Shown here: positions 1,268 through 48,475 of the stretch, one piece after another
How the letters are laid out: every line of letters starts with the position of its first letter
Numbering within the stretch: the stretch's first letter is position 1
From: Mytilus trossulus
Taxonomy: Eukaryota
Assembly (NCBI RefSeq): GCF_036588685.1
Contig: NW_026963302.1
Coordinates: 3,906,001-3,970,000, forward strand
Direction of reading: 5' to 3'
DNA length: 64,000 nt
Notes under the pieces: model-generated
The model's database searches: none
What the model was told of the DNA's origin: nothing
What the model saw: only the letters and a program-made list of their open reading frames with translations
Made by a program: the position numbers and the translations under genes

Positions 1268-1271
1268 ATAA

Positions 1272-10500: not shown

Positions 10501-13087
10501 GAGACTTTAAAAAGTAAAAGCTAGAAACATAGTCTGCAAACAGAAATAAGAACTGATATCAAAGAATGCTTTCAATAAACATAATAATGGTAACTTCACA
10601 TTGTAGGCAAATAATCCTAAACGCTTTAAAACAGATATCTGCTTTCGAGGTTACTGATTATTTTTTATAAAAAATCTAAATGATTTTAAACAAATGTTAT
10701 GTACATTCATTGTTATTGTACATTAATTCTTACTTTATTATTATACAATTATACACAATTTGTTATTATAATTACGGGAAAAAGTCCAATCTTGTGCAAT
10801 AATCTCACAACATAAGGAGGAAAAATGTCGGCGATTTTTTAGAAAGTAATATTCGAAAAACTATTAGTAAAAAGCAAAACATTAAGATCAAGATAATCAA
10901 CTTTGTAATTATGATATTATATACAACGGCCTCGTGTAATGTGGTTCAATTTTACTTACAAAATTGATAAAAAAAAATATCAACGTCAGATAATGTTAAC
11001 CATAAGCATATGCGAATACAATGACGTTTTTCATTTGTAAGAAGAGACTTTAAAAAGTAAAAGCTAGTAACATAGTCTGCGAACAGAAATAAGAACGGAT
11101 ATCATAGAATGCTTTCAATAAACATAATAATGGTAACTTCACATTGTAGACAAATAATCCTAAACGCTTTAAAACAGATATCTGCCTACTAGGTTACTGA
11201 TTATTTTTGTAAAAAGTCTAAATGATTTTTAACAAATTTCATGTACATTCATTGTTATTGTACATTAATTCTTGCTTATTTTTTATACAATTATAGACAA
11301 TTTGTTATTATAATTTCAGGAGAAAGTCCAAACTTGTGTGCAATAATCTCAAAACACAAGAAAGAAAAATGTCGGCGATTTTTTAGAAAGGTATATTCGA
11401 AAAATTATTAATAGAAAACAAAATATTGATATCAAGATAATCAACTTTGTAATTATGATATAATATATAACGGCACCGTGTAATGTGGTTCAATTTTACT
11501 TTCAAAATTGATAAAAAAAAATCAACGTCAGATAATGTTATCCATAAGCATTTGTGAATAAAATGACGTTTTTCTATTTGTTAGGAGAGACTTTAAAAAG
11601 CAAAAAATAGTAAAATAGTCTACAAACAGAAATAAGAACTGATATCAAAGAATGCTTTCAATAAACATAATAAAGGTAACTTCACATTGTACGCAAATAA
11701 TCCAAAACGCATAAAAACAAATATCTGCCTTCGAGGTTACTGCTTATTTAAAAAAAATCTAAATGATTTTTAACAAATTTCATGTACATTCATTGTTATT
11801 GTACATTAATTCTTACTTCATTATTATACAATTATGGACAATTTGTTACTATAATTTCAGGAGAAAGTCCAAACGTGTGCAATAATCTTACAACATAAGA
11901 AGGAAAAATGTCGGCGATTTTTTAGAAAGGTATATTCGAAAAATTATTAATAGAAAACAAAAAATTGATATCAAGATAATCAACTTTGTAATTATGATAT
12001 AATATATAACGGCACCGTGTAATGTGGTTCAATTTTACTTTCAAAATTGATAAAAAAAAAAATCAACGTCAGATAAAGTTATCCATAAGCATTTGTGAAT
12101 AAAATGACGTTTTTCTATTTGTTAGGAGAGACTTTAAATAGTAAAAGCTAGTAACATAGTCTGCAAACAAAAATAAGAACTGATATCAAAGAGTGCTTTC
12201 AATAAACATAATAATGGTAACTTCACATTGTACGCAACTAATCATAAACGCTTTAGAACAAATATCTGCCTTCGAGGTTACTGTTTATTTAAAAAAAAAA
12301 TCTAATTGATTTTTAACAATTTTTATGTACATTCATTGTTATTGTACATTAATTCTTACTTCATTATTATACAATTATAGACAATTTGTTATTATAATTT
12401 CAGGAGAAAGTCCAAACTTGTGCAATAATCTCACAACATAAGAAGGAAAAATGTCGGCGAATTTTTAGAAAGGTATATTCGAAAAACTATTAGTAAAAAG
12501 CAATACATTAATATCAAGATAATCCAGTTTGTTATTATGATATTATATATAACGGCACCGTGTAATGTGGTTCAATTTTACTTTTAAAATTGATCAAAAA
12601 AAAATCAACGTCAGATGATGTTATCCATAAGCATTTGTGAATTAAAGGACGTTTTTCTATTTGTTAGGAGAGGCTTTAAATAGTAAAAGCTAGTAACATA
12701 ATATGCGGACAGAACTAAGAACTGATATTAAATAATGCTTTCAATAAACATAATAATGGTAACATCACATTGTAGGCAAATAATCCAAAAAGCATTAAAA
12801 CAAATATCTGCCTTCGAGGTTACTGATTATTTTTGTTAACATTCTAAATGATTTTAAACAAGTTTTATGTACATTCATTGTTATTGTACATTAATTCTTA
12901 CTTTATTCTTATACAATAATACACAATTTGTTATTATAATTTCGAGAGAAAGTTCAAACTTGTGAAATAATCTCACAACATAAGAAGCAAAAATGTCGGC
13001 GATCTTTTAGAAAGTAATATTCGAAAAACTATTAGTAAAAAGCAAAACATTAAGATCAAGATAATCAACTTTGTAATTATGATATTA
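1513..13087. repeat. ~540-545 bp satellite, block 1 (~21 monomers), with ABC trimer HOR (~1634 bp)
   Basis: Landmarks such as cacattgtag and aaaatgtcggcg recur every ~540 bp. Variant ggcgttcttt at 5937 and 7571 gives a period of 1634. Confidence 0.97.
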
Positions 13088-16000
13088 ATTGCAATACTCA
13101 TATATGAAGACCCTATTTCAATACTGAACGAATAACAATGAGATGAAAAACAACGATCCAGAGTTGTTGACGTATTTTCTAAACATATTAAAACTTAATC
13201 AAGAGTTGTCTCCCTTTTTCTGTTGTGAATTATAATTCACAAATACCAAATACTAACTAAAGACTTTCTGTATATTATACTCATTTGTGTAGAGGTTCCA
13301 TCCTCTGTAATTCATATACAACTTATACAAAAACAATCCTTTGAATTAAACATACATTTTATTACACCAACTTGTATTTACATTTTCATGACTAGAATAT
13401 ACATTTTTTACTTTTTGGCAATACTTTGGCTACAGAGTATTCTATGATATTTTGTTGAGGCGCCAGGGTGACTACTGATTACCTACACACAATGGCTATC
13501 AGCTGACCTATGTTGACATAGTGTCATAAAACCCCTGGTAGTTAAACACGGTTACACCACCACCTACCATGGGGAGTGACCGGGGAAAACACTCGTATTA
13601 CCAATGCTCCAGTTAGCGCCCCACCTGTTGGCAGGTGTAGGCCTCCCCTCTATGAGATGAGGTGGAGGAGGTCCCAGAGTCACCCATCTGTAGACCACAC
13701 CGTTACCACTAACCACATTTTCCAAACCTGCAAATTTTATAACTTGTCAGGCCCAGAGCAAGGGCCGAGTGAAATAATCCCCCAATCACTACCAGTCTCC
13801 CTGGACCTCCCCCCATTCAAAATTGACTCTGCGCCTTAGGATAAAAGAAGATAATTGATTTTTTTAAAATGTCATGTTTTTGTTCCAATTAATATAATTG
13901 TTAATTAATAAAAACTAAAATTAATGCTGGATGCTCAAATCACAATAGTCCATAATATGTTAATAAAGTGCTTAATAACGGAAATGTCCAATTCATAGAA
14001 ACGCAAGTTTATTCGAAATTATCCTGTATTGGTCCAATACTATGAAGGTTCTGCTTGGATACTGGTAACCATAATATGCCAATCAAATACAACAAACAGA
14101 TGCCTGAAAATATAAAACAAAAACAGCAGCAACTATTCTCATAGGGAGGGCGGGCGGGTTTTAAAAGTTTAACTAATTTGTGTAACACCTGCTTTCTAGT
14201 CGACAGCAAATTAACAAGTGCCCGATTCGGGAATTCCAAAATTCTAATTCAAGCTGATACGGGAATTCCAAAATTCTGATTCAAGCTGCGAGCGCCCTCT
14301 ATGGCCATGCCGAATATGGCAATAAGCTACAGGCTGCAACACCCACACACCCACACAAATATTTGATTGAATTAAACCAGATTATTGAAAATATGAAATT
14401 TTTATAATCTCTATTAATTGCAATACTCATATATGAAGACCCTATTTCAATACTGAACGAATAACAATGAGATGAAAAACAACGATCCAGAGTTGTTGAC
14501 GTATTTTCTAAACATATTAAAACTTAATCAAGAGTTGTCTCCCTTTTTCTGTTGTGAATTATAATTCACAAATACCAAATACTAACTAAAGACTTTCTGT
14601 ATATTATACTCATTTGTGTAGAGGTTCCATCCTCTGTAATTCATATACAACTTATACAAAAACAATCCTTTGAATTAAACATACATTTTATTACACCAAC
14701 TTGTATTTACATTTTCATGACTAGAATATACATTTTTTACTTTTTGGCAATACTTTGGCTACAGAGTATTCTATGATATTTTGTTGAGGCGCCAGGGTGA
14801 CTACTGATTACCTACACACAATGGCTATCAGCTGACCTATGTTGACATAGTGTCATAAAACCCCTGGTAGTTAAACACGGTTACACCACCACCTACCATG
14901 GGGAGTGACCGGGGAAAACACTCGTATTACCAATGCTCCAGTTAGCGCCCCACCTGTTGGCAGGTGTAGGCCTCCCCTCTATGAGATGAGGTGGAGGAGG
15001 TCCCAGAGTCACCCATCTGTAGACCACACCGTTACCACTAACCACATTTTCCAAACCTGCAAATTTTATAACTTGTCAGGCCCAGAGCAAGGGCCGAGTG
15101 AAATAATCCCCCAATCACTACCAGTCTCCCTGGACCTCCCCCCATTCAAAATTGACTCTGCGCCTTAGGATAAAAGAAGATAATTGATTTTTTTAAAATG
15201 TCATGTTTTTGTTCCAATTAATATAATTGTTAATTAATAAAAACTAAAATTAATGCTGGATGCTCAAATCACAATAGTCCATAATATGTTAATAAAGTGC
15301 TTAATAACGGAAATGTCCAATTCATAGAAACGCAAGTTTATTCGAAATTATCCTGTATTGGTCCAATACTATGAAGGTTCTGCTTGGATACTGGTAACCA
15401 TAATATGCCAATCAAATACAACAAACAGATGCCTGAAAATATAAAACAAAAACAGCAGCAACTATTCTCATAGGGAGGGCGGGCGGGTTTTAAAAGTTTA
15501 ACTAATTTGTGTAACACCTGCTTTCTAGTCGACAGCAAATTAACAAGTGCCCGATTCGGGAATTCCAAAATTCTAATTCAAGCTGATACGGGAATTCCAA
15601 AATTCTGATTCAAGCTGCGAGCGCCCTCTATGGCCATGCCGAATATGGCAATAAGCTACAGGCTGCAACACCCACACACCCACACAAATATTTGATTGAA
15701 TTAAACCAGATTATTGAAAATATGAAATTTTTATAATCTCTATTAATTGCAATACTCATATATGAAGACCCTATTTCAATACTGAACGAATAACAATGAG
15801 ATGAAAAACAACGATCCAGAGTTGTTGACGTATTTTCTAAACATATTAAAACTTAATCAAGAGTTGTCTCCCTTTTTCTGTTGTGAATTATAATTCACAA
15901 ATACCAAATACTAACTAAAGACTTTCTGTATATTATACTCATTTGTGTAGAGGTTCCATCCTCTGTAATTCATATACAACTTATACAAAAACAATCCTTT

Positions 16001-16465
16001 GAATTAAACATACATTTTATTACACCAACTTGTATTTACATTTTCATGACTAGAATATACATTTTTTACTTTTTGGCAATACTTTGGCTACAGAGTATTC
16101 TATGATATTTTGTTGAGGCGCCAGGGTGACTACTGATTACCTACACACAATGGCTATCAGCTGACCTATGTTGACATAGTGTCATAAAACCCCTGGTAGT
16201 TAAACACGGTTACACCACCACCTACCATGGGGAGTGACCGGGGAAAACACTCGTATTACCAATGCTCCAGTTAGCGCCCCACCTGTTGGCAGGTGTAGGC
16301 CTCCCCTCTATGAGATGAGGTGGAGGAGGTCCCAGAGTCACCCATCTGTAGACCACACCGTTACCACTAACCACATTTTCCAAACCTGCAAATTTTATAA
16401 CTTGTCAGGCCCAGAGCAAGGGCCGAGTGAAATAATCCCCCAATCACTACCAGTCTCCCTGGACC
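13088..16465. repeat. 1329-bp tandem duplication (2.5 units) of the Ngaro-1 3' split-repeat module
   Basis: The same small ORFs recur at 13576/14905/16234 and 14009/15338. No differences seen by eye. Confidence 0.95.
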
Positions 16466-16579
16466 GCCACATGAGAGCCCAAGTCAGCTTCCAAATCTGA
16501 CATGGGTTCTCACCTCCACAAAATTTTCTTTATTGACTCTAAGGAAAAGTTGATTATGTTGTGCGTAGGACCGACTCCC

Positions 16580-16991
16580 CCCTACACAAACCCTTGTATA
16601 TTATTCAAGAAAAACCTGATTTCCAGTTTGTGACAAATAAGTTCCATTTGTTTTGTATAAAGACACTTCACTTGCCCTAATGTTCTCATGTAATATAGCT
16701 TTACCCCCCTTTTCCGTAACAAAGATTTTGTTGGCCACTAAATCACTCTTTTTCTGTTCTGTTCTATTATTGCACCCACATTCAAGGGTGCAACATGCCA
16801 GTATCGCACTGTAGCAATAAAGGCCATATTATAATAACCTTTTTAAATAAAGCCTGGTTACGTAGGGTAGACCATTTTTTTTTATTTTCAATTAAACCAT
16901 TTGATGTCAATTCTAAATATGTCAAATCAATAGCTCCACAGAGAATAATAATAAAATGGGGAGATGGTAAAAACAAATATTCTTTTTGCAT
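16580..16991 (-). pseudogene. Decayed SGNH hydrolase of Ngaro-1
   Basis: PHFIIILCGAIDL...VIIIWPLL, then in shifted frames IEQNRKRV...EKGGKAILHENI...LYKTNGTYLSQTGNQVFL. Aligns by eye with PHALILHCGGNDIG...LIWSSIL...RKRIN...GGYVI...LYSDDGVHLSFIGNDIFL of 41575-42072. Confidence 0.7.
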
Positions 16992-17709
16992 CCAGTAGGG
17001 AGTTCAAATCTTAAAGAGACTATAGAGACAATAACAAGTGGAAACAAGGAGCTATCGTTCATAAACTCGTAACAGTAACTTATCTAGAAGTGACATATTT
17101 TTCAGATTCGTAACTTCATACCGCAGGAAAATAAAAACATACCAAACATACTTGAAATTACCATATCTGATATTTACACTGAATTAATAACCTAACCAAC
17201 ATGTAATTCACTTGCGATACCGAAAAATCTGAAAATAAGAATGAATCCGAACAAACTAAAATAACTGAAAACAATTGAAGTAGATGCTAATGATACTATA
17301 GTTATGCACCGCACATAAAGAGTAAGAAAGGCACCAGACTGAGAGAGACTTATTGAAAACATATATGACTGTAACTAATTGTGGTTAAGTTAGTGCAGTG
17401 ATATAACTGTAGGTTTAGGATTTCATAATTGAACATTAAAACTTGACATGTAGCTATTTAGTTCAATTGAGTGCAAAGTGAATTTATTGCTTTCATTCAC
17501 TAGAGATTAATCTTGTTTATCTTGATCTTCTTAATTAAAAGGGGGAGGATTGTTATGTTAACAACAAACAAATGGAAGTGTTTAACGACCTTGTCTGGTT
17601 ATGTTTACATTATACGTTATCACTAATTTATAGTTGAATCGGCTTATAATTAATACTGACAGTTAGGAATTTATAATCATCAGATTAGCGGATGTTGTGT
17701 ATTTGTCCT

Positions 17710-18492
17710 TTAACCCTGTGATTGCACTGACACGCTGTTTTGTACTATGGGAGATGTGATGTGTAATAGCCAATATTCACCGTGTATATTTCCCCAAGAT
17801 AAATTTGGATTCTTCTCTATTTTTAGCCTAAATTGCTCGTCATAGGTGGCCCAGTTTTCTGACCTCGTTGCCGCTAGTCTTATATCGCGCATATATTTTA
17901 ACAATTCCTGTGCCCGTGTGCAGTATTTCTCAATGTAGACACTCATAAAAACCATGAATGCTGAAGTCCATTCATTTATGGACAAATTAACACTCGACGA
18001 TCTTTTTTCAATGCAAATTTTTCCCCTTTTTAATTTCAAATCGCCCTCGTCCACCTCTTCCATTGCTTTTTGCGTTCTCAAAAGAGAATGCAGCTCAATA
18101 AACTTTCCCTCCCAAATTTTTTCCTTAATTTTAAAAGGCACGTGTTCCCCCACTGTGTCATGAATGCTAGATTCTTGTGAAGGAGTGAAATCAATGGAAT
18201 TATTTGCAATTTCAAAGTTTTTGTGTAACGGGTCGTGCCTTAAAGAGGTGAACGCTCGTGCATCCTCCTCCGACTCATTACCTGATGAAAAATCAGTAGT
18301 TTCCACCGGTCCTTCTGCCACCACGTGTCTGACCCCTTGGGTTTTCTTTGCAATTCTTCTCCGGCCAGCTCCGTCCTTCTTTTGGGTTATTTCCTCGTTC
18401 TGCATTATCTGTCCGCCTGTCCTGTTAGCCGTTCTTCTCTTCTTTCCCATGGCCCTTGATGGCGATCCTACGGCATTTCTCTTGTTTGGCAT
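17710..18492 (-). CDS. Gag-like ORF1 of Ngaro-1 (260 aa from ATG MPNKR); C-terminal zinc finger lost
   Basis: KIKEKIWEGKFIEL...INEWTSAFMVFMSVY...LLKYMRDIR...WATYDEQFR...W matches the gag of 44974-45873. Confidence 0.8.
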   Translation of the reverse strand: MPNKRNAVGSPSRAMGKKRRTANRTGGQIMQNEEITQKKDGAGRRRIAKKTQGVRHVVAEGPVETTDFSSGNESEEDARAFTSLRHDPLHKNFEIANNSIDFTPSQESSIHDTVGEHVPFKIKEKIWEGKFIELHSLLRTQKAMEEVDEGDLKLKRGKICIEKRSSSVNLSINEWTSAFMVFMSVYIEKYCTRAQELLKYMRDIRLAATRSENWATYDEQFRLKIEKNPNLSWGNIHGEYWLLHITSPIVQNSVSVQSQG

Positions 18493-18757
18493 CTTTTCTT
18501 TTTCTTTTAAAAGTTTAACTAATTTGTGTAACACCTGCTTTCTAGTCGACAGCAAATTAACAAGTGCCCGATTCGGGAATTCCAAAATTCTAATTCAAGC
18601 TGATACGGGAATTCCAAAATTCTGATTCAAGCTGCGAGCGCCCTCTATGGCCATGCCGAATATGGCAATAAGCTACAGGCTGCAACACCCACACACCCAC
18701 ACAAATATTTGATTGAATTAAACCAGATTATTGAAAATATGAAATTTTTATAATCTC

Positions 18758-21700
18758 TATTATATACAACGGCCTCGTGTAATGTGGTTCAATTTTACTT
18801 ACAAAATTGATAAAAAAAAATATCAACGTCAGATAATGTTAACCATAAGCATATGCGAATACAATGACGTTTTTCATTTGTAAGAAGAGACTTTAAAAAG
18901 TAAAAGCTAATAACATAGTCTGCGAACAGAAATAAGAACTGATATCATAGAATGCTTTCAATAAACATAATAATGGTAACTCCACATTGTAGACAAATAA
19001 TCCTAAACGCTTTAAAACAGATATCTGCCTACTAGGTTACTGATTATTTTTGTAAAAAGTCTAAATGATTTTTAACAAATTTCATGTACATTCATTGTTA
19101 TTGTACATTAATTCTTGCTTATTTTTTTATACAATTATAGACAATTTGTTATTATAATTTCGAGAGAAAGTTCAAACTTGTGCAATAATCTCAAAACACA
19201 AGAAAGAAAAATGTCGGCGATTTTTTAGAAAGGTATATTCGAAAAATTATTAATAGAAAACAAAAAATTGATATCGAGATAATCAACTTTGTAATTATGA
19301 TATAATATATAACGGCACCGTGTAATGTGGTTCAATTTTACTTTCAAAATTGTTAAAAAAAAATATCAACGTCAGATAATGTTAACCATAAGCATATGCG
19401 AATAAAATAACGTTTTTCTATTTGTTAAGAGAGACTTTAAAAAGTAAAAGCTAGTAACATAGTCTGCAAACAGAAATAAGAACTGATATCAAAGAATGCT
19501 TTCAATAAACATAATAATGGTAACTTCACATTGTAGGCAAATAATCCTAAACGCTTTAAAACAGATATCTGCTTTCGAGGTTACTGATTATTTTTTATAA
19601 AAAATCTAAATGATTTTAAACAAGTGTTATGTACATTCATTGTTATTGTAAATTAATTCTTACTTTATTATTATACAATTATACACAATTTGTTATTATA
19701 ATTACGGGAAAAAGTCCAATCTTGTGCAATAATCTCACAACATAAGGAGGAAAAATGTCGGCGATTTTTTAGAGAGTAATATTCGAAAAACTATTAGTAA
19801 AAAGCAAAACATTAAGATCAAGATAATCAACTTTGTAATTATGATATTATATACAACGGCCTCGTGTAATGTGGTTCAATTTTACTTACAAAATTGATAA
19901 AAAAAAATATCAACGTCAGATAATGTTAACCATAAGCATATGCGAATACAATGACGTTTTTCATTTGTAAGAAGAGACTTTAAAAAGTAAAAGCTAGTAA
20001 CATAGTCTGCGAACAGAAATAAGAACTGATATCATAGAATGCTTTCAATAAACATAATAATGGTAACTTCACATTGTAGACAAATAATCCTAAACGCTTT
20101 AAAACAGATATCTGCCTACTAGGTTACTGATTATTTTTGTAAAAAGTCTAAATGATTTTTAACAAATTTCACGTACATTCATTGTTATTGTACATTAATT
20201 CTTGCTTATCTTTTATACAATTATAGACAATTTGTTATTATAATTTCAGGAGAAAGTCCAAACTTGTGTGCAATAATCTCAAAACACAAGAAAGAAAAAT
20301 GTCGGCGATTTTTTAGAAAGGTATATTCGAAAAATTATTAATAGAAAACAAAAAATTGATATCAAGATAATCAACTTTGTAATTATGATATAATATATAA
20401 CGGCACCGTGTAATGTGGTTCAATTTTACTTTCAAAATTGATAAAAAAAAAAATCAACGTCAGATACTGTTATCCATAAGCATTTGTGAATAAAATGACG
20501 TTTTTCTATTTGTTAGGAGAGACTTTAAAAAACAAAAAATAGTAAAATAGTCTACAAACAGAAATAAGAACTGATATTAAAGAATGCTTTCAATAAACAT
20601 AATAATGGTAACTTCACATTGTACGCAAATAATCCAAAACGCATAAAAACAAATATCTGCCTTCGAGGTTACTGCTTATTTAAAAAAAATCTAAATGATT
20701 TTTAATAAATTTCATGTACATTCATTGTTATTGTACATTAATTCTTACTTCATTATTATACAATTATGGACAATTTGTTACTATAATTTCAGGAGAAAGT
20801 CCAAACGTGTGCAATAATCTTACAACATAAGAAGGAAAAATGTCGGCGATTTTTTAGAAAGGTATATTCGAAAAATTATTAATAGAAAACAAAAAATTGA
20901 TATCAAGATAATCAACTTTGTAATTATGATATAATATATAACGGCACCGTGTAATGTGGTTCAATTTTACTTTCAAAATTGATAAAAAAAAAATCAACGT
21001 CAGATAAAGTTATCCATAAGCATTTGTGAATAAAATGACGTTTTTCTATTTGTTAGGAGAGACTTTAAATAGTAAAAGCTAGTAACATAGTCTGCAAACA
21101 GAAATAAGAACTGATATCAAAGAATGCTTTCAATAAACATAATAATGGTAACTTCACATTGTATGCAAATAATCCTAAACGCTTTAAAACAGATATCTGC
21201 TTTCAAGGTTACTGATTATTTTTATAAAAAAATCTAAATGATTTTAAACAAGTGTTATGTACATTCATTGTTATTGTACATTAATTCTTACTTCATTATT
21301 ATACAATTATACACAATTTGTTATTATAATTACGGGAAAAAGTCCAATCTTGTGCAATAATCTCACAACATAAGAAAGAAAAATGTCGGCGATTTTTCAG
21401 AAAGTAATATTCGAAAAACTATTAGTTAAAAGCAAAACATTAAGATCAAGATAATCAACTTTGTAATTATGATATTATATACAACGGCCTCGTGTAATGT
21501 GGTTCAATTTTACTTACAAAATTGATAAAAAAAAATATTAACGTCAGATAATGTTAACCATAAGCATATGCGAATACAATGACGTTTTTCATTTGTAAGA
21601 AGAAACTTTAAAAAGTAAAAGCTAGTAACATAGTCTGCGAACAGAAATAAGAACTGATATCATAGAATGCTTTCAATAAACATAATAATGGTAACTTCAC

Positions 21701-30305: not shown

Positions 30306-30399
30306 CAAATATAAGCAACGTGTACAACTCAACATTAACTTGACCGGGTTCCTATGTTAAAACCAATTTGAAACTGAACTCTTATAAAGGATTTCTCAT

Positions 30400-31020: not shown

Positions 31021-31022
31021 AT

Positions 31023-35222: not shown

Positions 35223-35467
35223 ATTTTATACTTATCTTATGTCCGAATCTCCTGTCCTTTTTGTGTTCCTTCAGAGTTCAAACCACGCAATGAACAAATC
35301 ACGAAAAGCATGCAATTTTATACCAAATAAAAGCGGGTAAATGTCTTATAAAAAATGTAGGTGAACAAAAGACGCTTAAGTCCGTCAAAATTAAAGAAAA
35401 GTTAACTCTAGTTTAGCAGACGATACTCTCAATTAATTAAATTGATTTAATGCTGAACGATTAAATC

Positions 35468-38400: not shown

Positions 38401-40306
38401 AGCATTGTGAATAAAATGACGTTTTTCTATTGTTAGGAGAGACTTTAAAAAGTAAAAGCTAGTAACATAACATGCGGACAGAATTAAGAACTGATATCAA
38501 AAAATGCTTTCAATAAACATAATAATGGTAACTTCACATTGTAGACAAATAATCCTAAACGCTTTAAAACAGATATCTGCCTTCGAGGTTACTGATTATT
38601 TTTGTAAAACATCTGAATGATTTTAAACAAATTTTATGTACATTCATTGTTTTTGTACATTAATTATTACTTCATTATTATACAATTATAGACAATTTGT
38701 TATTAATACTTTAAGGGGAATGTCCAAATTTGTGCAATAATCTCAAGACATAAGAAGCAAAAATGTTGGCGATTTTTTAGAAAGGTATATTCGAAAATCT
38801 ATTAGTAAAAAGCAAAACATTAAGATCAAGATAATCAAGTTTGTAATTATGATATTTTATATAACGGCACCGTGTAATGTGGTTTAATTTTACTTACAAA
38901 ATTGATAAAAAAAATATCAACGTCAGAATATGTTATCCATAAGCATTTACGAATAAAATGACGTTTTTTTATTGTCAGAAGAGACTTTTAAAAGTCAAAG
39001 CTAGTAACATAGTCTGCAAAGAGATATAAGAACTGGTATCAAAAAAAGCTTTCAATAAACGCAATAATGGTAACTTCATATTGTAGACAACTTATCCTAA
39101 ACGCATTAAAACAAATATATTTCTTCGAGGTTACTGATTATTTTTGTATATTAAGGTAAAATGATTTCAAACAAATTTTATGTACATTCATTGTTATTGT
39201 ACAGTAATTCTCACTTCATTATTATACAATTATAGACAATTTGTGACTATAATTCAAGAAGAAAGTCCAAACTTGTGCAATAATCTCAAGACATAAGAAG
39301 CAAAAATGTTGGCGATTTTTTAGAAAGGTATATTCGAAAAACTACTAGTAAAAAGGAAAACATTTAGATCAAGATAATCAAGTTTGGAATTATGATATTT
39401 TATATATCGGCACCGTGTAATGTGGTTTAATTTGAAATACAAAATTGATAAACAAATATCAACGTCAGATAATGTTATCCATAAGCATTTACGAATAAAA
39501 TGACGTTTATCTATTGTTAGGAGAGACTTTAAAAAGTAAAAGCAGGTAACAAAGTCTGCAAATAGAAATAAGAACTGATATCAAAGAATGCTTTCAATAA
39601 ACATAATAATGGTAACTTCACATTGTAGACAAATAATCTTAAACGCTTTAAAACAGATATCTGCCTTCGAGGTTACTGATTATTTTTGTAAAACATCTAA
39701 ATGATTTTAAAAAATTTTTATGTACATTCATTGTTATTGTACATTAATTCTTACTTCATTATTATACAATTATAGACAATTTGTTATTAATACTTTTAGG
39801 GGAATGTCCAAACTTGTGCAATAATCTCAAGACATAAGAAGCAAAAATGTCGGCGATTTTTTAGAAAGGTATATTCGAAAATCTATTAGTAAAAAGCAAA
39901 ACATTAAGATCAAGATAATCAACTTTGTAATTATGATATTTTATATAGCGGCACCATGTAATGTGTGTAAATTTTACTTACAAAATTGATAAAAAAAAAT
40001 ATCAACGTCAGATAATGTTATCCATAAGCATTTGTACATAAAATGACGTTTTTCTATTGTCAGAAGAGACTTTTAAAAGTAAAAGCTAGTAACATAGTCT
40101 GCAAACGGATATAAGAACTGATATCAAAAGAATGCTTTCAATAAACACAATAATGGTAACTTCATATTGTAGACAACTAATCGTAAACGCATTAAAACAA
40201 ATATATGCCTACGAGGTTACTGATTATTTTTGTATAAGCTAAAATGATTTCAAAGAAATTTTATGTACATTCATTGTTATTGTACATTAATTATCACTTC
40301 ATTATT
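35468..40306. repeat. ~540-bp satellite, block 3 (~9 more divergent monomers)
   Basis: Same monomer. Phase is continuous with block 2 across Ngaro-2. Confidence 0.97.
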
Positions 40307-41574
40307 GAATATATCATTGGATCAAACATACCACTTGGTGTAAATTACCAAAACAGAATTGACGAACAGACGCCATTGATGCCTTGATTTGTATTTCAGT
40401 ACAACAAATAACAAACACTGATTTTGTTTGGATATTGAATTGTCATGGCAACATTTAATCAAAATTCATTCATAAAACAACAACAACTGTTACAACAACA
40501 GTACACAACCAAAATATTTGTCAATCAATAAAATGTTGATGACGATTGAACTAATCATTATATCACAGCTGGGCGATCCAAAGCTGGTGTACTGAAGGGC
40601 GGTCCATTCAGCAATATTTCAGAATTAGCAGCTGGGCTTTCCATAGTCTGCATAAAATGAAGTAAATTTCGCTCCGGTTGTGTGACTGCTTCAGCATGTT
40701 ACCATGACGGATTTGTGTTTGAAGACTGGAGCATCTGAAAAATAAATAGAGCCAGCAGCAAACAAAGTTCAATTCTTAAGGGTGGGCGAGGAAGGTCTTA
40801 ATTTTTTAACGTCCTCTCCGTTCAATTTTCAAGGTAAAAGAGACCGTTAAATTGCACGGACTTTTACTACTCGGCTGTCACATGCTCAAATTAGCATAAT
40901 AAGAGTAAAGGACGACTCGATTTGTCGAGTCTCAATACATGTATATATGTTAATTCAATAAATGAATTTAATTTTCATTTAATTAAATTCTATTATTGAA
41001 TATATCATTGGATCAAACATACCACTTGGTGTAAATTACCAAAACAGAATTGACGAACAGACGCCATTGATGCCTTGATTTGTATTTCAGTACAACAAAT
41101 AACAAACACTGATTTTGTTTGGATATTGAATTGTCATGGCAACATTTAATCAAAATTCATTCATAAAACAACAACAACTGTTACAACAACAGTACACAAC
41201 CAAAATATTTGTCAATCAATAAAATGTTGATGACGATTGAACTAATCATTATATCACAGCTGGGCGATCCAAAGCTGGTGTACTGAAGGGCGGTCCATTC
41301 AGCAATATTTCAGAATTAGCAGCTGGGCTTTCCATAGTCTGCATAAAATGAAGTAAATTTCGCCAAAATTATCAATCGGACTTTAGTACAGAATGATAAT
41401 CCGCCACAAAATTTACCCATGACAATTCAGTTATCTCCAATTCTACGATCAACTTACAACTGATTTAAACAATCAAAATGATAAAAGATATTACGAATTC
41501 AACATTTATGTAACAACCAAATTTCATAAAATACATGTATTTAATCCATTAGATTATGAACTGTTTATTTTAAA

Positions 41575-42191
41575 TTAAAGATGATCGTGGGGAAATACAA
41601 CACAATGTGGATACTTTATGAATGTTTCTAGTGCTGACTGAATTTGATTCAAGAAAATATCATTTCCAATAAAAGATAAATGTACTCCATCGTCAGAATA
41701 TAGCGCTGGATGACGATCATCAAAATCGGGATATTTGATAACGTATCCTCCATGTTTGAGTATATAAGATCTCACTCCCCTATTTATTCTCTTTCTTGTA
41801 ACTTCCATGGCATGGTCATCACTTGAGTAACGCCATGATCGCCTGGGAAGAATGCTTGACCATATAAGAGAACAATTTGGGAGCATGCGAGACAGAATTA
41901 CTATTGTGAATTTAACATGATATAGCAGAGCACCACATGGTACATTTCCTATGTCATTCCCACCACAATGCAATATCAACGCATGTGGAATTTTGTTGCA
42001 TAAATTAATGATGCTGTTAACTGTGCCAACAACATCGTCCCATTTCATACCAGATTTGCCTGCCCATCGCAAAAAACAATTATTATTTTTTAAAAGACCT
42101 AAATTACTACCTGAAGGTCTGTTCTCCGAGTGATCACGAGCACTGCATATTATTGAAGAACCAATAATCCATATTTCATTACTAAGACAAG
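41575..42191 (-). CDS. SGNH/GDSL hydrolase of Ngaro-3
   Basis: The frame is open upstream of the called ORF: IWIIGSS (block I), GKSGM (II), HCGGND (III), DGVH (V). Begins at a 3' splice site, ttataatttCAG. Confidence 0.88.
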
Positions 42192-42204
42192 CTGAAATTA
42201 TAAG

Positions 42205-43116
42205 TTATTTGGTTAGCTCAATTCTTATATAACGTTTAAAGGATGCAGATTTCCAACGACCTAAAGTCATAATTTCTTCATCAGTATGACCGTTCATAGC
42301 AAAATGTGTAGCTGCTCCTATTCGAAATGAATGTGTGTTGTACTCATTTGGATTACAATCAATAAATTTCATGGTTTTGCATAGTACACTAGAAAATTGA
42401 TATCGTGTTACACCAGTTTTGTTAAAATGACAAAAAAATGGTCCATTGTTTTGGTGTCTGATTGAAATAAAGTTTAATAACAATCTCACCGGGCAAATAT
42501 CTACTTGATTAAAACTTTCAACTGTTAATGTTGTAGATAAACCTTTTTGGTCTGTTTTCGAAAAGGGAATTGTGATATATGCAGATTGTGAATGATGTGA
42601 AACATTGACATCATCATTGTTAATGACATGTGGCGTATTTCTATTAATTGTAATTTCACCGATTCTCAAAAATGCAAAAAATGCTAATGAAAACATGGAT
42701 CTAAATAAAGTACATTCATATACTGAAGAGCAGACAAATTGCAACGAGTTTATTAATCGAGCTAATATTTCTACAGTTATAGGTTTGCGACTATCCACTA
42801 CGCCATATAATTTGTCCATTCCTTTCAACATTTTTTGTATAATGAACGATGAAGTCAAATCAGTGAGTTTATTTATTCGTAAATAATAGCTTAAGCCTGA
42901 CAAGTACACCTTAACCGTTGCAGGGGCATATCCTAATTTTGATAAATAAGCAACATAGTTAACTAAATGCGAAATACTGGGTGGCCATGTATTTCCTAAA
43001 CCTTCTTTTAATCTAAATGAAACAAATGAAGTCAGTCCATTATTATACGTTTTCCATGTATTCTGAGAATTCGAGGCGTCCAATAACTTTGCTATTTCTG
43101 GTCTAAAATGTTCCAA
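42205..43116 (-). CDS. Tyrosine recombinase of Ngaro-3 (intact)
   Basis: AFLRIGE, SKTDQ, CPV, HSFRIGAAT, GRWKS..FKRYIR. Confidence 0.95.
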   Translation of the reverse strand: MEHFRPEIAKLLDASNSQNTWKTYNNGLTSFVSFRLKEGLGNTWPPSISHLVNYVAYLSKLGYAPATVKVYLSGLSYYLRINKLTDLTSSFIIQKMLKGMDKLYGVVDSRKPITVEILARLINSLQFVCSSVYECTLFRSMFSLAFFAFLRIGEITINRNTPHVINNDDVNVSHHSQSAYITIPFSKTDQKGLSTTLTVESFNQVDICPVRLLLNFISIRHQNNGPFFCHFNKTGVTRYQFSSVLCKTMKFIDCNPNEYNTHSFRIGAATHFAMNGHTDEEIMTLGRWKSASFKRYIRIELTK

Positions 43117-44724
43117 AATTCCTCCGGAATTGTAGCTGGATGTGTATCTACTGTTAGAGCCAGACTTTTGAATTTCTGAAATTTTTTACGAGAAATACAA
43201 TCTGCAATTATATTTGTATAACCAGGAATGAACTGTGCCTTAATGTTAAAGTTGCCTAATAATGACCAATATACTATGTGTCTAACAAGGTTCATAATTC
43301 GTATATATTTTGACATCTTCTTATTTAAAATTTCAACTACGGCATATTATCCGAATTAAATAAAATTTTCTTTTTTTGAAAAAGATTACCCCATAAGTAA
43401 ACAGATAGTGCAATAGGTATCATTTCTAAATATGATATATCCCTGAGAACTTCAGTACCAGACCACTCTACAGGCCATTTAAGAAAAGCCCATTTACCTT
43501 GGAGATAGCAGCCACACCCTTTTGTTGAACCACCAGCGCTGTCAGTAAATAGTTGTAAAACTGAATTTGAAGTCCAATCAATGTCGAGCATGTAACTAAT
43601 ACCGTTAAATTTGTCTAAAAACAATTCCCATACCAATAAGTCTTGATACATGCCTTCTGTGATTCTAACATAATGATGTGGTTTCTTTGCGTGACTACTT
43701 GCCAAATAAATTCGTCTGCTAAATGCTCTGCCTGCAGGTAGAGCTTTTGTACAAAAAGCTAATGACCCACACAAAGATTGTAGGTCCCTTAAAGTTATCT
43801 TTTTCCTACCTAATACCCACTTAATTTTTGACTTTAACTCCAATACTTTGTCCTCCGGAATTTGTATAAGCATTTTTTCTGTGTCTATAAGCAAACCTAA
43901 ATAACTAAGTTTTGTTGTTGGGCCTTCTGTTTTTTCATGAGCAATTGGGACTCCAAGACGACAACATACCCTATCAAAACTATTCATCAAATTTTTACAA
44001 TCCTCAGTATTGCTTTTACCAGCAAATAAAAAATCATCCAAATAATGATCAAGATTATCTGAATTGGACTCAGTCATGACAGCCCATTGAATAAAAGTTG
44101 AAAATTTTTCGAATAAGCAATTTGATTCTGAATACCCCATAGGCAATAATTTATCTATGAAATAATATTCATTAAGTTTAAACCCTAATAGATCAAAGTC
44201 CCTCGGATAGATTTTTAACAATCTGAAGGCGGATTTAATGTCCTTTTTTCCAATTTCAACATTTGAACCCAACCTTTTAATCATATCAATAGCATTATCA
44301 AAAGACGAATACTTTACTGTAGTAAATTTTTCATCAATAAAGTCGTTTACACTCAAATTCGGCGGAAAAGATAAGTGCGTAATCAATCTAAATCCACCCG
44401 TTTTTTTAGGAATTACACCTATAGGCGAACACCTTAGATTAGATATAGGTCTAGTCAAAAAAGGACCAGCTATGCGACCATTTCTTACTTCACTCATGAC
44501 TTTTGCCCATGCCACCCCAGGATTTTGGATGACTGAATGTAAATTTTTTGATTCAATCCTACATCGGGGTCCAAAATAATTTAACCTAAAACCTTCAGAA
44601 AATCCCTTGCATAATATCATTGCATCATATTGATTTGGGTAATTGAAAAGAAGTTTATTTAATTCTGTGATATTGATCGGAGTAAAGCCAAGACACCATA
44701 TGTCCAACGGATTAACTACAGATT
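43092..44724 (-). pseudogene. Reverse transcriptase-RNase H of Ngaro-3, 1-nt frameshift at ~43342
   Basis: FRLITHLS, DIKSAFR, LPMG, YLDD, YLGL. RNase H LFTDSAGG, LEM, SDN, then NIIADCISR in the shifted ORF 43092-43316. Confidence 0.93.
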
Positions 44725-44740
44725 CTGAAAAATATAAAAT

Positions 44741-45861
44741 TTAATTGTTAAATGTATGTGGTGCGACCATTCGAATGGCAGGGAATCTGCTTCCTCGAGG
44801 TCTAAATCCTTGATTCAAATTCGCTCCTCTTTGAAAATTTGTTTGACTTCTAGGTGCAAAATTTCTAGCACCTCTATTTTGATATGTGTCTCGGGCTGCA
44901 TTTTGAGAACGAGCATATGCCTGGTTGCTATTTACTTGTTGACAGCCAGCGAAAGGGTGGGCCATTCCGCATTTCATACATAAATGGGTGTAAAACAATT
45001 TTGACGATTACAAGCTCCCTTGAAATTATAATCATAGCATGGTCGATTACCTACACTTGTCTGTTGAATTGTATTACCCTCCGGTTCCCCATTAGCTATG
45101 ACGGTGTACCATACAATGCCATCAATGGAAGACCAAGATCTTGTTGGATTATTTGCCATTCTTAATCTAAATTGCTGGTCATAACAATAAATCTTCTCAA
45201 AAGACACTTGTGTACCTCTAATGATTGACATATAAGTGGTCAATTCACTAGCTAAATTTGGAAAACGTTGAATAAATATTTTCATATAATTTATAAATGC
45301 ATCAGTCCATGACTCAATGTTTTGAATAGATTTAACTTTGCTGTTTTTGTTTGATGTAATTACAAGTGAACCAGCTGCATTATCATAACTTATAACATTT
45401 TGAGGTCTGTCAACTTGGCTAATAAAATTTTGATAAAGAAGTAATGACAAATCTATAAATTCTCTATTCCAAATTTTTTCTTTCAAATTTTGGGATACGT
45501 AAACATCACATTCTGATTGATTAGGTATATGCATAGGATCATTATTTATCTCACCATTTTGATTAGGCATTGGCACAGGAGCTGGTATTTCAACTTGCGC
45601 AAATGGCGCTTGTACGTTCATTGCTGGTGCTACAGGACCTTGCAAGGCAGGTTGTCTTTCAATTGGCAAAGGAGGAGCCTGGATTTGTAGAGGAAGAGGT
45701 GCTTGTACCTGTACTTCACCAGCAATTGCCCCCACATCTTGATTTCTTGGTGCAGCAACTGCACGGTTTCTCCTTCCGCGTCGTCTCTCTGGTGGTTGCG
45801 CTTCAACAACGGGCACTCGTACGCGCCCATTCCCATTTCTTCGTCGACCAATTCTAGGCAT
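44741..45861 (-). pseudogene. Gag of Ngaro-3, 1-nt frameshift at ~44995 splitting the zinc finger
   Basis: MPRIGRRR...KEKIWNREFIDL...WTDAF...YDQQFR...CYDYNFKGACNRQNCF | YTHLCMKCGMAHPFAGC. Confidence 0.88.
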
Positions 45862-46634
45862 TTGTATAAACAAAATAGGTTAAAAAATTGAAGTACTTAC
45901 TAACATCACATAGCTAGTATTCTGTCTTTTAATTTGATTTATTTTTGTAACAGTTTCAATGCATCAGTATTCATTTTATTCATATATATCAACTCTGTCA
46001 TTTGAGCTTAATAAATTAATTCCTTAGATTGTCTCTTATCTACACATATTTTTATTTATTTAATTTTTTTTGTACATCACGAATTGTGATATGTAAAATA
46101 TATAAATTATTTATGATCAACTTAACCTGTAAACATGCACCTACCTGTCTCTACGCATTATAACAGGTGTACTTTAACATTCTGCATCAAGGATAAATAA
46201 ACTGTGAGATTAAACATGTCTAGGCAATGCATATACTAATAAAAAAGTATTCATTTAGAATTTCAATGCCACGTGGCTCAACCGCATATTTAATTCGACG
46301 AAGTAATAAGTTAATTTAAATATTAAAATAAAAACAAACATAAATAAAATCATTAAATCCGAATCAGATTTAAAATATGAATTCTTAAATAAACTTATTA
46401 AAACAATACTTATCTTGATAGTGTATGAAAAATCTTTCTCTTAATTTTTTAACGTCCTCTCCGTTCAGTTTTCAAGGTAAAAGAGACCGTTAAATTGCTC
46501 GGACTTTTACTACTCGGCTGTCACATGCTCAAATTAGCATAATAAGAGTAAAGGACGACTCGATTTGTCGAGTCTCAATACATGTATATATGTTAATTCA
46601 ATAAATGAATTTAATTTTCATTTAATTAAATTCT

Positions 46635-48475
46635 ATTATTATACAATTATAGACAATTTGTGACTATATTTCAAGAAGAAAGTCCAAACTTATGCAATAA
46701 TCTCACAACATTAGAAGCAAAAATATCGGCGATGTTTTAGAAAGGTATAATCGAAAAACTACTAGTAAAAAGCAAAACATCACTATCAAGATAATCAAGT
46801 TTGTAATTATGATATTACATATAACGGCACCGTGTAATGTGGTTCAATTTTACTTACGAAATTGATAAAAAAAAATATCAACGTCAGATAATTTTATCCA
46901 TAAGCATTTGCGAAAAAAATGACGTTTTTTTTTGTTAGGAGAGACTTAAAAAAGTGAAAGCTAGTAACATAGTTTGCAAACAGAAATAAGAACTGATATC
47001 AAAGAATGCTTTCAATAAACATAATAATGATAACTTCAAATTTAAGACAACTAATCCTAAACGCATTAAAACAAATATCTGCAATCGAGATAACTGATTA
47101 TTTTTGTAAAAAATCTGAATGATTTTAAACAAATTGTATGTACATTCGTTGTTATTGTATATTAATTCTTACTTCATTATTATACAATTAAAGACAATTT
47201 ATTATTATTATAATTTCAGGATAAAGTCCCAACTTGTGCAATAATCTCACAACATAAGAAGCATAAATGTCGGCAATTTTTTTGAAAGGTATATTCGAAA
47301 AACTATTAGTAAAAAGCAAAACATTAAGATCAAGATAATCAAGTTTGTAATTATGATATTTTATATAACGGCACCGTGTAATGTGGTTTTATTTTACTTA
47401 CAAAATTGATTAAAAAAAATATCAACGTCAGATGATGTTATATATAAGCATTTGTGAATAAATGACGTTTTTCCTTTGTTAGGAGAGACTTTAAAAAGTA
47501 AAAGCTAGTAACATAGTCTGCAAACAGAAATAAGAACTGATATCAAAGAATGCTTTCCATAAACATAATAATGGTAACTTCACATTGTAGGCAACTAATC
47601 CTAAACGCTTTAAAACAAATATCTGCCTTCGAGGTTACTGATTATTTTTGTAAAAAATCTAAATGATGTTAACAAATTTCATGTACATTCATTGTTATTG
47701 TATATTAATTCTTACTTCATTAATATGCAATTATAGACAATTTGTTATTATAATTTCAGGAGAAAGTCCAAACTTGTGCAATAATCTCACAACATAAGAA
47801 GCAAAAATGTCGGCGATTTTTAAGAAAGGTACATTCGAAAAATTATTACTAGAAAGCAAAACATCAATATCAAGATAATCAATTTTGTAATTATGATATT
47901 ATATACAACGGCACCGTGTTATGTGGTTCAAATTTACTTACAAAATTGATAAAAAAAAAATATTAACGTCAAATAACGTTTATCTATTGTTAGGAGAGAC
48001 TTTAAAAAGTAAAAGCTAGTAACATAGTCTGCGAACAGAAATAAGAACTGATATCAAAGAATGATTTCAATAAACATTATAATGGTTATTTCCCATTGTA
48101 GGCAAATAATCCTAATAGCATTAAAACAAATATCTGCCTTCGAGGTTATTGATTATTTTTGTAAAAAATCTAAATGATTTTAAACAAGTTTTATGTACAT
48201 TTATTGTTATTGTACATTAATTCTTACTTTATTATTATACAATTATAGACATTTCAGGAGAAAGTCCAAACTTGCGCAATAATCTCACAACATCAGAAGC
48301 AAAAATGTCGGCGATTGTTTAGAAAGGAATATTCGAAAAATTATTAATAGAAAATAAAACATCAATATCAAGATAATCAACTTTGTAATTATGATATTAT
48401 ATATAAAGGCACCGTGTAGTGTGGTTCAATTTTACTTTCAAAATTGATAAAAAAGAAAAAGAAAATATCAACGTC
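46635..48475. repeat. ~540-bp satellite, block 4 (~3.4 monomers, small deletions); right end of the array
   Basis: Monomer similarity ends after aatatcaacgtc at ~48475. Confidence 0.95.

What the first reader, a model, noticed from the sequence alone, without database searches (positions are those of the whole stretch)
13083..46640. A satellite array acting as a sequence-specific landing pad for three different Ngaro YR retrotransposons
Seen: three elements with different terminal repeats and divergent gags sit in the ~540-bp satellite in the same orientation, and the monomer resumes in exact phase after each. Ngaro-2 (core TTATTAT) and Ngaro-3 (core ATTATT) use the same monomer site, cttcATTATTATacaatt. 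Ngaro-1 uses the look-alike site gaTATTAtatacaac. In Ngaro-1 and Ngaro-3 the same core also occurs at the internal B/A junction (ctcTATTAattgc 14412; tctATTATTgaat 40992), which equals the predicted circle junction. I recognised no Ngaro in the 15 kb outside the array. Established: YR retroelements are thought to integrate circular DNA by recombination across a short shared core. Inference: the TATTA(TA)TACAA motif is a preferred attachment site, making this satellite a repeated safe-harbour target for a guild of Ngaro families.
Basis: partly seen in the sequence, partly recalled or inferred. Interest (0 to 1): 0.85.

Follow-up and report, generated by a model that had tools for sequence, protein, structure and literature searches.

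The report
Ngaro elements clustered in a mussel satellite
Three families of tyrosine-recombinase (Ngaro-type) mobile elements really did insert cleanly into one mussel satellite array, but genome-wide they insert wherever 3-7 bases match their own circle junction, so the satellite is a crowded spot and not a dedicated landing pad.

Summary
A 543-bp satellite (window 1513-48460) is interrupted by three Ngaro-type elements, all with gag on the minus strand. Each is flanked by one short core (TATTA, TTATTAT, ATTATT), and the monomer resumes in exact phase. The same core sits at the internal B/A junction of E1 and E3, and of E2-family copies elsewhere.

Corrections:
- Only E3 is autonomous (gag, RT, YR, weak hydrolase hit).
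- E1 and E2 carry only gag.
- E2 holds a nested Crypton-like element on the opposite strand.
- Window 1-1512 is a fourth copy (E2'), probably a duplicate of E2.

The landing-pad reading is only partly supported. About 70 genomic loci of the three families were examined. Only the window copies and one more E3-like copy in the same array lie in the satellite. All others lie in unrelated DNA sharing 3-7 bp with the circle junction, with no TACAA and no extended similarity.

The satellite is a single array of about 136 kb. Four independent insertions there are far above uniform expectation, and three of them cluster within 15 bp of the monomer. However, other interruptions use other monomer positions, and decayed Ngaro relics lie just outside the array. 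That favours regional accumulation.

Earlier scan notes report similar junction cores elsewhere in this genome.

The parts
1513..48460 (+). Satellite with a period of about 543 bp and a 3-monomer higher-order repeat of about 1630 bp. It is the right-hand 47 kb of a single array spanning about C27:3,818,094-3,954,460.
   Evidence: Self-BLAST. Monomer identity matrix. Three genome-wide anchor searches gave 130-137 forward hits, and every listed one lies in this array.
1..1512 (-). E2': right end of a second copy of the E2 element, cut by the window edge. It sits at the same monomer site, with core TTATTAT at 1513-1519.
   Evidence: It is 99.3% identical to 33954-35475. Its left end is at C27:3901482 and its length is the same, about 6.03 kb. 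One flanking monomer is 99.8% identical to one beside E2, against a median of 89.4%, which suggests duplication within the array.
13088..18757 (-). E1: non-autonomous, gag-only Ngaro-type element. On the plus strand it reads B-A-B-A-B-internal-A, that is, one extra 1329-bp A-B unit. Core TATTA lies at 13083-13087, 14412-14416, 15741-15745 and 18758-18762.
   Evidence: Repeat families at 100% identity. Junction sequences. Only gag-like similarity and no RT or YR. About 27 genomic loci at 99-100% identity.
17710..18585 (-). E1 gag-like ORF of 291 aa.
   Evidence: 32% identity to E3 gag over 165 aa, E 6e-20. No Pfam hit.
29435..35467 (-). E2: non-autonomous Ngaro-type element in single-unit form (B at left, A at right, no internal junction). 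Core TTATTAT lies at 29428-29434 and 35468-35474. A 34-bp tandem repeat lies at 29928-30308.
   Evidence: Junctions. Other family copies have B-A-B arrays and the circle junction AAATC-TTATTAT-TAAATATTCG. The usual family unit is about 3.36 kb.
31098..31914 (-). E2 gag remnant.
   Evidence: tblastn gives 47% identity to E3 gag, E 4e-40. The 158-aa ORF piece finds 13 close family loci.
32588..35229 (+). Nested Crypton-like element inside E2, about 2.64 kb. ORF 32769-33581 has a QRICH1-type domain and ORF 34142-34744 a Phage_integrase C-terminal part. A 76-nt inverted repeat lies at 35071-35225.
   Evidence: Pfam. Boundaries come from query coverage: E2-family copies join query positions 988 and 3630 directly, and one separate copy lies at C5:38049667. 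Its YR is unrelated to the E3 YR. Inverted repeat.
40307..46634 (-). E3: autonomous Ngaro. On the plus strand it reads B2 (from 40307), A2 (40796-40991), junction core 40992-40997, B1, internal region, A1 (46439-46634). Core ATTATT lies at 40301-40306 and 46635-46640.
   Evidence: Repeats. Junctions. ORFs and Pfam. About 30 genomic loci.
44974..45873 (-). E3 gag ORF of 299 aa.
   Evidence: ORF list. Homologous to the E1 and E2 gags.
43337..44707 (-). E3 reverse transcriptase ORF of 456 aa.
   Evidence: Pfam RVT_1, E 4.7e-9.
42205..43116 (-). E3 tyrosine recombinase ORF of 303 aa.
   Evidence: Pfam Phage_int_SAM_1 and Phage_integrase, both weak. 1089 first-look relatives in the genome.
41575..42072 (-). 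E3 SGNH/GDSL-like hydrolase ORF of 165 aa.
   Evidence: Pfam Lipase_GDSL_2, E 2e-4, below the curated cut-off.

Best explanation
These are ordinary Ngaro-type tyrosine-recombinase retroelements of a mussel genome: one autonomous family (E3) and two gag-only families (E1, E2), the latter presumably mobilised in trans. They integrated by conservative recombination between the short core at their circle (A/B) junction and a matching 3-7 bp stretch in the target.

The junction cores of the three families are near-identical: ...TC-TATTA, ...TC-TTATTAT and ...TC-TATTATT. Any AT-rich TTATTA-like stretch is therefore a usable site. The 75% A+T satellite offers many such stretches per monomer, including a perfect ATTATTAT.

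The satellite is not a specific target, because more than 90% of the copies of each family sit elsewhere at generic sites. The cluster in this array is best explained by four things together:
1. The monomer is rich in core-like stretches.
2. The neighbourhood (C27, about 3.72-3.95 Mb) accumulates Ngaro elements inside and outside the satellite.
3. Element-bearing blocks are copied within the array (E2 to E2').
4. The window was picked for follow-up because it looked striking.

Shown: anatomy, cores, precise junctions, the genome-wide distribution of flanks, and confinement of the satellite to one array. Inferred: the circular intermediate, trans-mobilisation, and the cause of the local excess.
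For: Precise junctions, each with one core also present at the internal junction.

The shared stretch is always a substring of the element's own junction:
- E3: 4-6 bp within TATTATT in 12 loci.
- E1: 3-7 bp, mostly TTA, in 17 loci.
This pattern fits recombination and not a staggered-cut duplication.

The E2-family circle junction AAATC-TTATTAT-TAAATATTCG is seen in copies on C5 and C6.

Genome-wide flanks:
- Only L011 of the 40 fetched E1 and E3 loci matches the satellite.
- Flanks are about 31% GC and mutually unrelated, apart from one duplicated pair. One insertion lies in an (ATT)n microsatellite.
- E2-family right junctions are non-satellite except the two in this window.
- There is no extended similarity of the satellite sites to the A-end or B-start.

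Core density: TTATTAT is 7 times denser, ATTATT 3 times and TATTA 2 times denser in the satellite than in the 15.5-kb flank.

Regional signal:
- Decayed E1-like gag at C27:3742346.
- E2-like fragment at C27:3717838. Both lie outside the satellite.
- Other array interruptions lie at other monomer positions.

E2/E2' duplication: the elements are 99.3% identical and share the rare nested insert. One flanking monomer is 99.8% identical, against a median of 89.4%.

Literature: integration of DIRS-like elements by recombination between a 3-bp circular junction and an identical genomic sequence, without target-site duplication, is the published model (PMC3266345).
Against: - The array is only about 72-75 kb of satellite within a 136-kb span of a 1.30-Gb genome. 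It still holds 4 independent insertions among about 70 family loci, where about 0.008 are expected under uniformity.
The family-specific expectation there is about 0.002.
- Three independent events (E2, E3, L011) fall within 15 bp of a 543-bp monomer. That monomer has about 18 clusters of core matches of 5 bp or more.
- All four independent events share one orientation, although an equally long reverse core (ATAATAAT) is present in most monomers.
- Core density explains only 2-7 fold of the excess.
- The contents of three further gaps in the array (11.4, 12.9 and 8.3 kb) could not be read. I therefore could not test whether the array collects Ngaro elements specifically or transposable elements in general.
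Confidence: 0.72

Rival explanations
1. The monomer carries a preferred attachment site (TATTA(TA)TACAA, or some wider feature of the monomer) that the recombinases of several Ngaro families recognise. This would make the array a repeated safe-harbour target.
For: - Four independent insertions of three families lie in 0.006-0.01% of the genome.
- E2, E3 and the L011 copy lie within 15 bp of each other in the monomer.
- All are in one orientation.
- One contig of another sequencing run carries 255 nt of foreign sequence ending at the E1-type TATTA site.
Against: - More than 90% of each family's loci are outside the satellite and show no TACAA and no conserved flank.
- The satellite sites are not outliers in similarity to the junction arms.
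- E1 needs only TTA at most sites.
- Gaps 1 and 3 of the array lie at other monomer positions.
- Ngaro relics lie just outside the array.
- E2 and E2' are probably one event.
Confidence: 0.13
2. The cluster is a chance coincidence that stands out only because the window was picked for looking unusual. Ngaro-type elements are numerous in this genome, so a few 50-130 kb stretches with 3-5 of them are expected.
For: - At least 1089 first-look YR candidates, plus gag-only families, exist in the genome.
- With 1,500-3,000 copies spread uniformly, roughly 0.2-5 windows of 47 kb in the genome would hold at least 3 copies (my estimate).
- Many scan notes in this genome concern Ngaro elements.
Against: - Only about 4% of the genome had been scanned.
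- A second E3-lineage copy in the unseen part of the array has a family-specific probability of about 0.002.
- Two more relics lie within 100 kb.
- Three events cluster within 15 bp of the monomer.
Confidence: 0.1
3. The flanking short repeats are target-site duplications made by a staggered-cut integrase or endonuclease, and not recombination cores.
For: Each element is flanked by a short direct repeat of 5-7 bp.
Against: - The repeat is always a substring of the element's own internal junction. Its length varies from 3 to 7 bp between copies of one family.
- The same core sits at the internal B/A junction.
- The only integration enzyme encoded is a tyrosine recombinase.
Confidence: 0.02

Closest known systems
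Ngaro retrotransposons (YR retroelements with split direct repeats A1 ... B1-A2-B2; features as summarised in PMC13465315 and PMC7192593)
   Same: E3 has the order gag, RT, YR, the split repeats, no room for a methyltransferase domain, and an extra SGNH-like hydrolase ORF as described for some Ngaro elements. E1 and E2 share the repeat architecture and gag.
   Different: E1 and E2 are gag-only derivatives. Copies vary in the number of A-B units: E1-family lengths are 3011 + n x 1329 bp. Single-unit forms such as E2 lack the internal junction.
DIRS1-like integration model: a 3-bp circular junction recombines with an identical genomic sequence, with no target-site duplication (Piednoel et al. 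2011, PMC3266345)
   Same: The element ends and the internal junction share a short core that is also present once in the empty target. The minimal homology seen here is also 3 bp (TTA, E1 family).
   Different: The junction core here is longer and A+T-only (5-7 bp). Observed homology ranges from 3 to 7 bp. The repeats are split direct repeats, not inverted terminal repeats with an internal complementary region.
Ngaro types 1 and 2a of Cafeteria burkhardae, which insert mostly into endogenous virophages (Hackl et al. 2021, PMC8547959)
   Same: It is a case where Ngaro families show a strong bias for one kind of repeated host DNA.
   Different: There, 82-91% of copies lie in the preferred target and the bias depends on ORF1. 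Here fewer than 10% of copies of any family lie in the satellite.
DIRS-1 clustering in Dictyostelium centromeres (PMC7192593)
   Same: YR retroelements pile up in a repeat-rich chromosomal neighbourhood, which may act as a safe site.
   Different: There is no evidence here that the array is centromeric. The families are mostly dispersed.
[quoted passage not shown]
   Same: The element nested in E2 encodes a YR unrelated to the Ngaro YR, plus a QRICH1-type domain, and has no RT.
   Different: It is decayed and its exact ends were not resolved.

Membership tests
Ngaro (YR retrotransposon) | Split direct repeats: A1 at the 5' end and B1-A2-B2 at the 3' end | tested here: met
   E3 reads B2-A2-B1 ... 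A1 on the plus strand, which is A1 ... B1-A2-B2 on the coding strand. E1 is the same with one extra A-B unit. The window copy of E2 lacks A2-B2, but family copies on C6, C5 and C2 have them.
Ngaro (YR retrotransposon) | Encodes gag, RT(/RH) and a tyrosine recombinase, in that order | tested here: met
   E3 has gag at 44974-45873, RVT_1 at 43337-44707 and Phage_integrase at 42205-43116, all on the minus strand. This is not met for E1 and E2, which keep only gag and are non-autonomous derivatives.
Ngaro (YR retrotransposon) | No methyltransferase domain (this separates Ngaro from DIRS1-like and PAT-like elements) | tested here: inconclusive
   No such Pfam hit was found in any E3 ORF at E <= 0.01. 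Only 220 bp separate the RT and YR ORFs, so there is little room. The DIRS methyltransferase domain was not searched with a dedicated profile.
Ngaro (YR retrotransposon) | Optional SGNH/GDSL hydrolase ORF downstream of YR | tested here: inconclusive
   ORF 41575-42072 hits Lipase_GDSL_2 at E 2e-4 with 22.3 bits, below the curated cut-off of 32.9.
YR-mediated integration at a shared core | One short core at both ends, at the internal (circle) junction, and once in the empty site, with no arbitrary target-site duplication | tested here: met
   The circular intermediate itself cannot be tested with these tools.
Target-specific retroelement (landing-pad specialist) | Most copies of the family lie in the proposed target sequence | tested here: not met
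   E1: 1 of about 27 loci. E3: 2 of about 30. E2: 2 of about 13-17, probably from one event.
Target-specific retroelement (landing-pad specialist) | A conserved target motif beyond the crossover core | tested here: not met
   Reconstructed targets show no conserved flanks. TACAA follows the core in 2 of the right flanks read by eye (L037, one C2 copy). Similarity of the satellite sites to the junction arms lies within the range of generic sites.

The most novel reading that the evidence does not exclude
The array is a true hot spot for tyrosine-recombinase elements. On this reading, Ngaro circles integrate into this single 136-kb satellite, and especially into the ATTATTAT-ACA-ATTAT stretch of the monomer, at least 100 times more often per core-matching site than elsewhere. 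The cause would be something other than the core, such as chromatin state, DNA structure or the avidity of many tandem sites. Inserted elements would then spread within the array by duplication or gene conversion, as E2 and E2' suggest.
Probability: 0.25. Interest if true: 0.6.

Novelty: new member of a known kind. Interest (0 to 1): 0.35.

Why it matters
Target choice of eukaryotic tyrosine-recombinase retroelements is poorly documented, and this locus adds concrete data. Filled and reconstructed empty sites for three mussel families show that 3-7 bp of identity to the circle junction is enough. The families share nearly the same core. Gag-only derivatives are the most recently active: E1 copies are 99-100% identical.

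The result also serves as a caution. A striking local cluster of insertions in a satellite does not show sequence-specific targeting once genome-wide copies are examined.

If the residual local excess proved to be an integration preference, it would be a second example of a preferred harbour for Ngaro elements, after the Cafeteria virophage case.

Tried and rejected
1. A satellite derived from an expanded Ngaro A-B unit: the monomer shows no significant similarity to E1, E2 or E3. Rejected for these three families.
2. Extended homology or recombinase-binding arms shared by the monomer site and the junction: none found beyond the core.
3. A TACAA motif downstream of the core in genome-wide copies: absent apart from 2 flanks.
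4. E2 as a Crypton instead of a Ngaro, suggested by the plus-strand YR and QRICH1-type ORFs: rejected. Those ORFs belong to a nested 2.64-kb element, and E2 itself has a minus-strand gag and Ngaro-type ends.
5. A simple 34-kb tandem duplication to explain E2 and E2': rejected. Only about 1.9 kb of right flank is closely related and it is offset by one monomer. A smaller block copy or gene conversion is more likely.
6. Reading the three other gaps of the array (C27:3818651-3830005, 3842489-3855693 and about 3875476-3883837):
- Searches with gag and YR proteins found no hits there, but only the best candidates are scored.
- The content remains unknown.
8. Read laying on one monomer: only low-coverage contigs were available. 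They show that the satellite exists in other runs, but the loose ends were too noisy to map insertion sites.
9. PDB sequence search with the E3 YR: no hit.
Full report
**What is there**

The window is G000:C27:3906001-3970000 of a 1.30-Gb assembly. Earlier notes of this scan identify the organism as a mussel.

A satellite with a period of about 543 bp runs from 1513 to 48460. It has a three-monomer higher-order repeat. Median monomer identity is 89%, but pairs about 1630 bp apart reach 98-100%.

The satellite is interrupted three times:
- E1 at 13088-18757
- E2 at 29435-35467
- E3 at 40307-46634

The first 1512 bases of the window are the right end of a fourth element, E2'. It is 99.3% identical to E2 and sits at the same monomer position.

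**Anatomy of the elements**

E3 is a complete Ngaro. On the minus strand it encodes:
- gag (44974-45873)
- a reverse transcriptase (43337-44707, RVT_1)
- a tyrosine recombinase (42205-43116)
- a small ORF with a weak GDSL/SGNH hit

It has the split direct repeats A1 ... B1-A2-B2.

E1 has the same repeat plan with one extra 1329-bp A-B unit, and all of its copies of that unit are 100% identical. It encodes only a gag-like protein, 32% identical to E3 gag, with no RT and no YR. This agrees with scan note s1-827594.

E2 also keeps only a gag remnant, 47% identical to E3 gag. It is a single-unit form with B at one end and A at the other.

The plus-strand ORFs in E2 have a QRICH1-type domain and a Phage_integrase hit. 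They belong to a nested 2.64-kb Crypton-like element at about 32588-35229. Ordinary E2-family copies join the two sides of that stretch directly, and one separate copy of the insert exists on C5. Its recombinase is unrelated to the Ngaro YR.

Calling all three "YR retrotransposons" holds only for E3.

**Junctions**

Each element is bounded by one copy of a short core on either side: TATTA (E1), TTATTAT (E2), ATTATT (E3).
- The same core lies at the internal B/A junctions of E1 (14412, 15741) and E3 (40992).
- It also lies at the internal junctions of E2-family copies on C5 and C6, which read AAATC-TTATTAT-TAAATATTCG.
- Empty sites rebuilt from left flank, one core and right flank align without a gap across the junction to intact monomers.

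This is the signature expected of conservative recombination between a circle junction and a target sharing the core. It matches the published model for DIRS-like elements, in which a 3-bp circular junction recombines with an identical genomic sequence and no target-site duplication is made (PMC3266345).

The three families have almost the same junction (...TC-TATTA, ...TC-TTATTAT, ...TC-TATTATT). This by itself explains why E2 and E3 can use one site.

**Genome-wide test of the landing-pad idea**

I searched the whole assembly with the A ends of the three families. I fetched 20 E3-family and 20 E1-family loci with their flanks.

- Of these 40 loci, only L011 (C27:3861179-3868479) has satellite flanks. 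It is an E3-like copy of about 95% identity in the same array, 84 kb upstream.
- L011 used a different sub-site, the ATTAT that lies 9 bp downstream.
- All other flanks are about 31% GC and unrelated to one another, apart from one duplicated pair. One insertion lies in an (ATT)n microsatellite.
- Among the E2-family right junctions whose letters I could read, only the two in this window are in the satellite.

The stretch shared by target and circle junction:
- E3: 4-6 bp within TATTATT in 12 loci.
- E1: 3-7 bp in 17 loci, and mostly just TTA.

TACAA follows the core in only 2 of the right flanks I read by eye. Over 15 bp on each side, the satellite sites are no more similar to the A end or the B start than generic sites are.

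The half about generic TATTA/ATT sites without a downstream TACAA is met.

**The residual excess**

The other half of that criterion, no enrichment for the satellite, is not met.

Three independent anchors of 24-26 bases give 130-137 forward hits in the whole genome. Every listed one lies between C27:3,818,094 and the end of the array in this window, and the controls give 0-1 hits. The satellite is therefore a single array: about 72-75 kb of monomers within a 136-kb span, or 0.006-0.01% of the genome.

| Family | Loci in genome | Loci in the array | Source |
|---|---|---|---|
| E1 | about 27 | 1 | |
| E3 | about 30 | 2 | |
| E2 | about 13-17 | 2 (probably one event) | |

That makes four independent events (E1, E2, E3, L011), where about 0.008 are expected under uniformity.

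Part of this excess is ascertainment:
- The window was chosen because it looked striking.
- Ngaro-type elements are numerous, with at least 1089 first-look YR candidates.

The family-specific expectation there is about 0.002.

Core density explains only 2-7 fold of the excess.

Three independent events fall within 15 bp of the monomer, which has about 18 clusters of core matches of 5 bp or more. All four events share one orientation, although the reverse 8-mer ATAATAAT is present in most monomers.

**Why I still do not read this as sequence-specific targeting**

1. The elements have no need of the satellite, as shown above.
2. The spacing of two anchors that flank the E2/E3 site is +77 bp when the site is intact. 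By this measure, two further interruptions of the array lie at other monomer positions:
   - a 12.9-kb insert somewhere in monomer positions 65-374
   - an 8.3-kb insert in positions 398-506
   - the interruptions therefore use at least four different monomer positions
3. Two decayed Ngaro relics lie outside the satellite on the same contig, so the neighbourhood and not only the monomer collects these elements:
   - an E1-like gag at C27:3742346
   - an E2-like fragment at C27:3717838
4. E2 and E2' are most simply one insertion copied within the array. They share the rare nested insert. They differ by 0.7%. One flanking monomer is 99.8% identical, in the top 0.2% of monomer pairs, although offset by one monomer.

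**Limits**

I could not read the three other gaps of the array or the left flanks of E2-family copies.
- The only sequencing runs available were low-coverage contigs. They show that the satellite exists in other samples. One contig carries foreign sequence ending at the E1-type TATTA site, but the data are too noisy to map insertions.

**Comparison with the known**

- The elements are Ngaro by architecture (features as summarised in PMC13465315).
- The integration signature is that of the DIRS-order model (PMC3266345).
- True target bias of Ngaro elements is known from Cafeteria, where 82-91% of some types lie in endogenous virophages (PMC8547959).
- DIRS-1 piles up in Dictyostelium centromeres (PMC7192593).
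- The present case is much weaker, because fewer than 10% of any family lie in the array.

**Verdict**

The mechanism of short-core recombination is supported. The claim of a sequence-specific landing pad is not supported. A real but unexplained local excess remains and is worth a proper genome-wide, per-site test. Other notes of this scan (s1-818583, s1-827269) report the same kind of shared junction core for other YR elements of this genome.

Noticed in passing
L021-L040 (E1-family loci); C11:66590908-66596976; C3:80419550-80423736: Copies of one Ngaro family differ in the number of terminal A-B units. E1-family lengths are 3011 + n x 1329 bp, with n = 0, 1, 2 or at least 3. One locus (L022) has whole units in tandem, 3017 bp apart. 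An E3-related locus on C3 has at least 5 A ends on a grid of about 692 bp over 4.2 kb. Such arrays could come from circles recombining into resident junctions and could seed satellites.
   Followed up: partly
window 32588-35229: A decayed Crypton-like element is nested in E2 and E2' on the opposite strand. It has a QRICH1-type domain ORF, a Phage_integrase ORF and a 76-nt inverted repeat at 35071-35225. Only one other near-full copy was found in the genome (C5:38049667, 93%).
   Followed up: partly
window 1513-48460: The satellite has a three-monomer higher-order repeat. Pairs 1627-1634 bp apart are 98-100% identical, against a median of 89%. One monomer has a deletion of about 42 bp near 37402.
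   Followed up: partly
C22 (for example 290666, 292111, 832608, 834858), minus strand: Two different satellite anchors each have about 12 weak reverse-strand matches (2-3 mismatches), scattered at intervals of 100-500 kb along contig C22. Their spacing does not fit the monomer. This may be a dispersed repeat sharing pieces with the satellite.
   Followed up: no
window 35907 and 35940-35942: In all four laid runs, contigs break away from the satellite at these same two places, and the loose sequence is consistent between runs. A piece of the monomer of about 34 bp seems to be shared with another repeat in these samples.
   Followed up: no
window 58125-59432 and 61348-63336, minus strand: The flank outside the array holds non-Ngaro retroelement ORFs: a 662-aa ORF with RVT_1 (E 5e-37) and a 435-aa ORF without a clear domain. 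The neighbourhood is therefore rich in transposable elements in general.
   Followed up: no
window 29928-30308: An 11-copy tandem repeat of 34 bp lies inside the B region of E2.
   Followed up: no
C27:3717838-3718137 and C27:3742346-3742985: Decayed Ngaro gag relics, E2-like at 84% DNA identity and E1-like at 63% protein identity, lie 100 and 76 kb to the left of the array, outside the satellite.
   Followed up: partly
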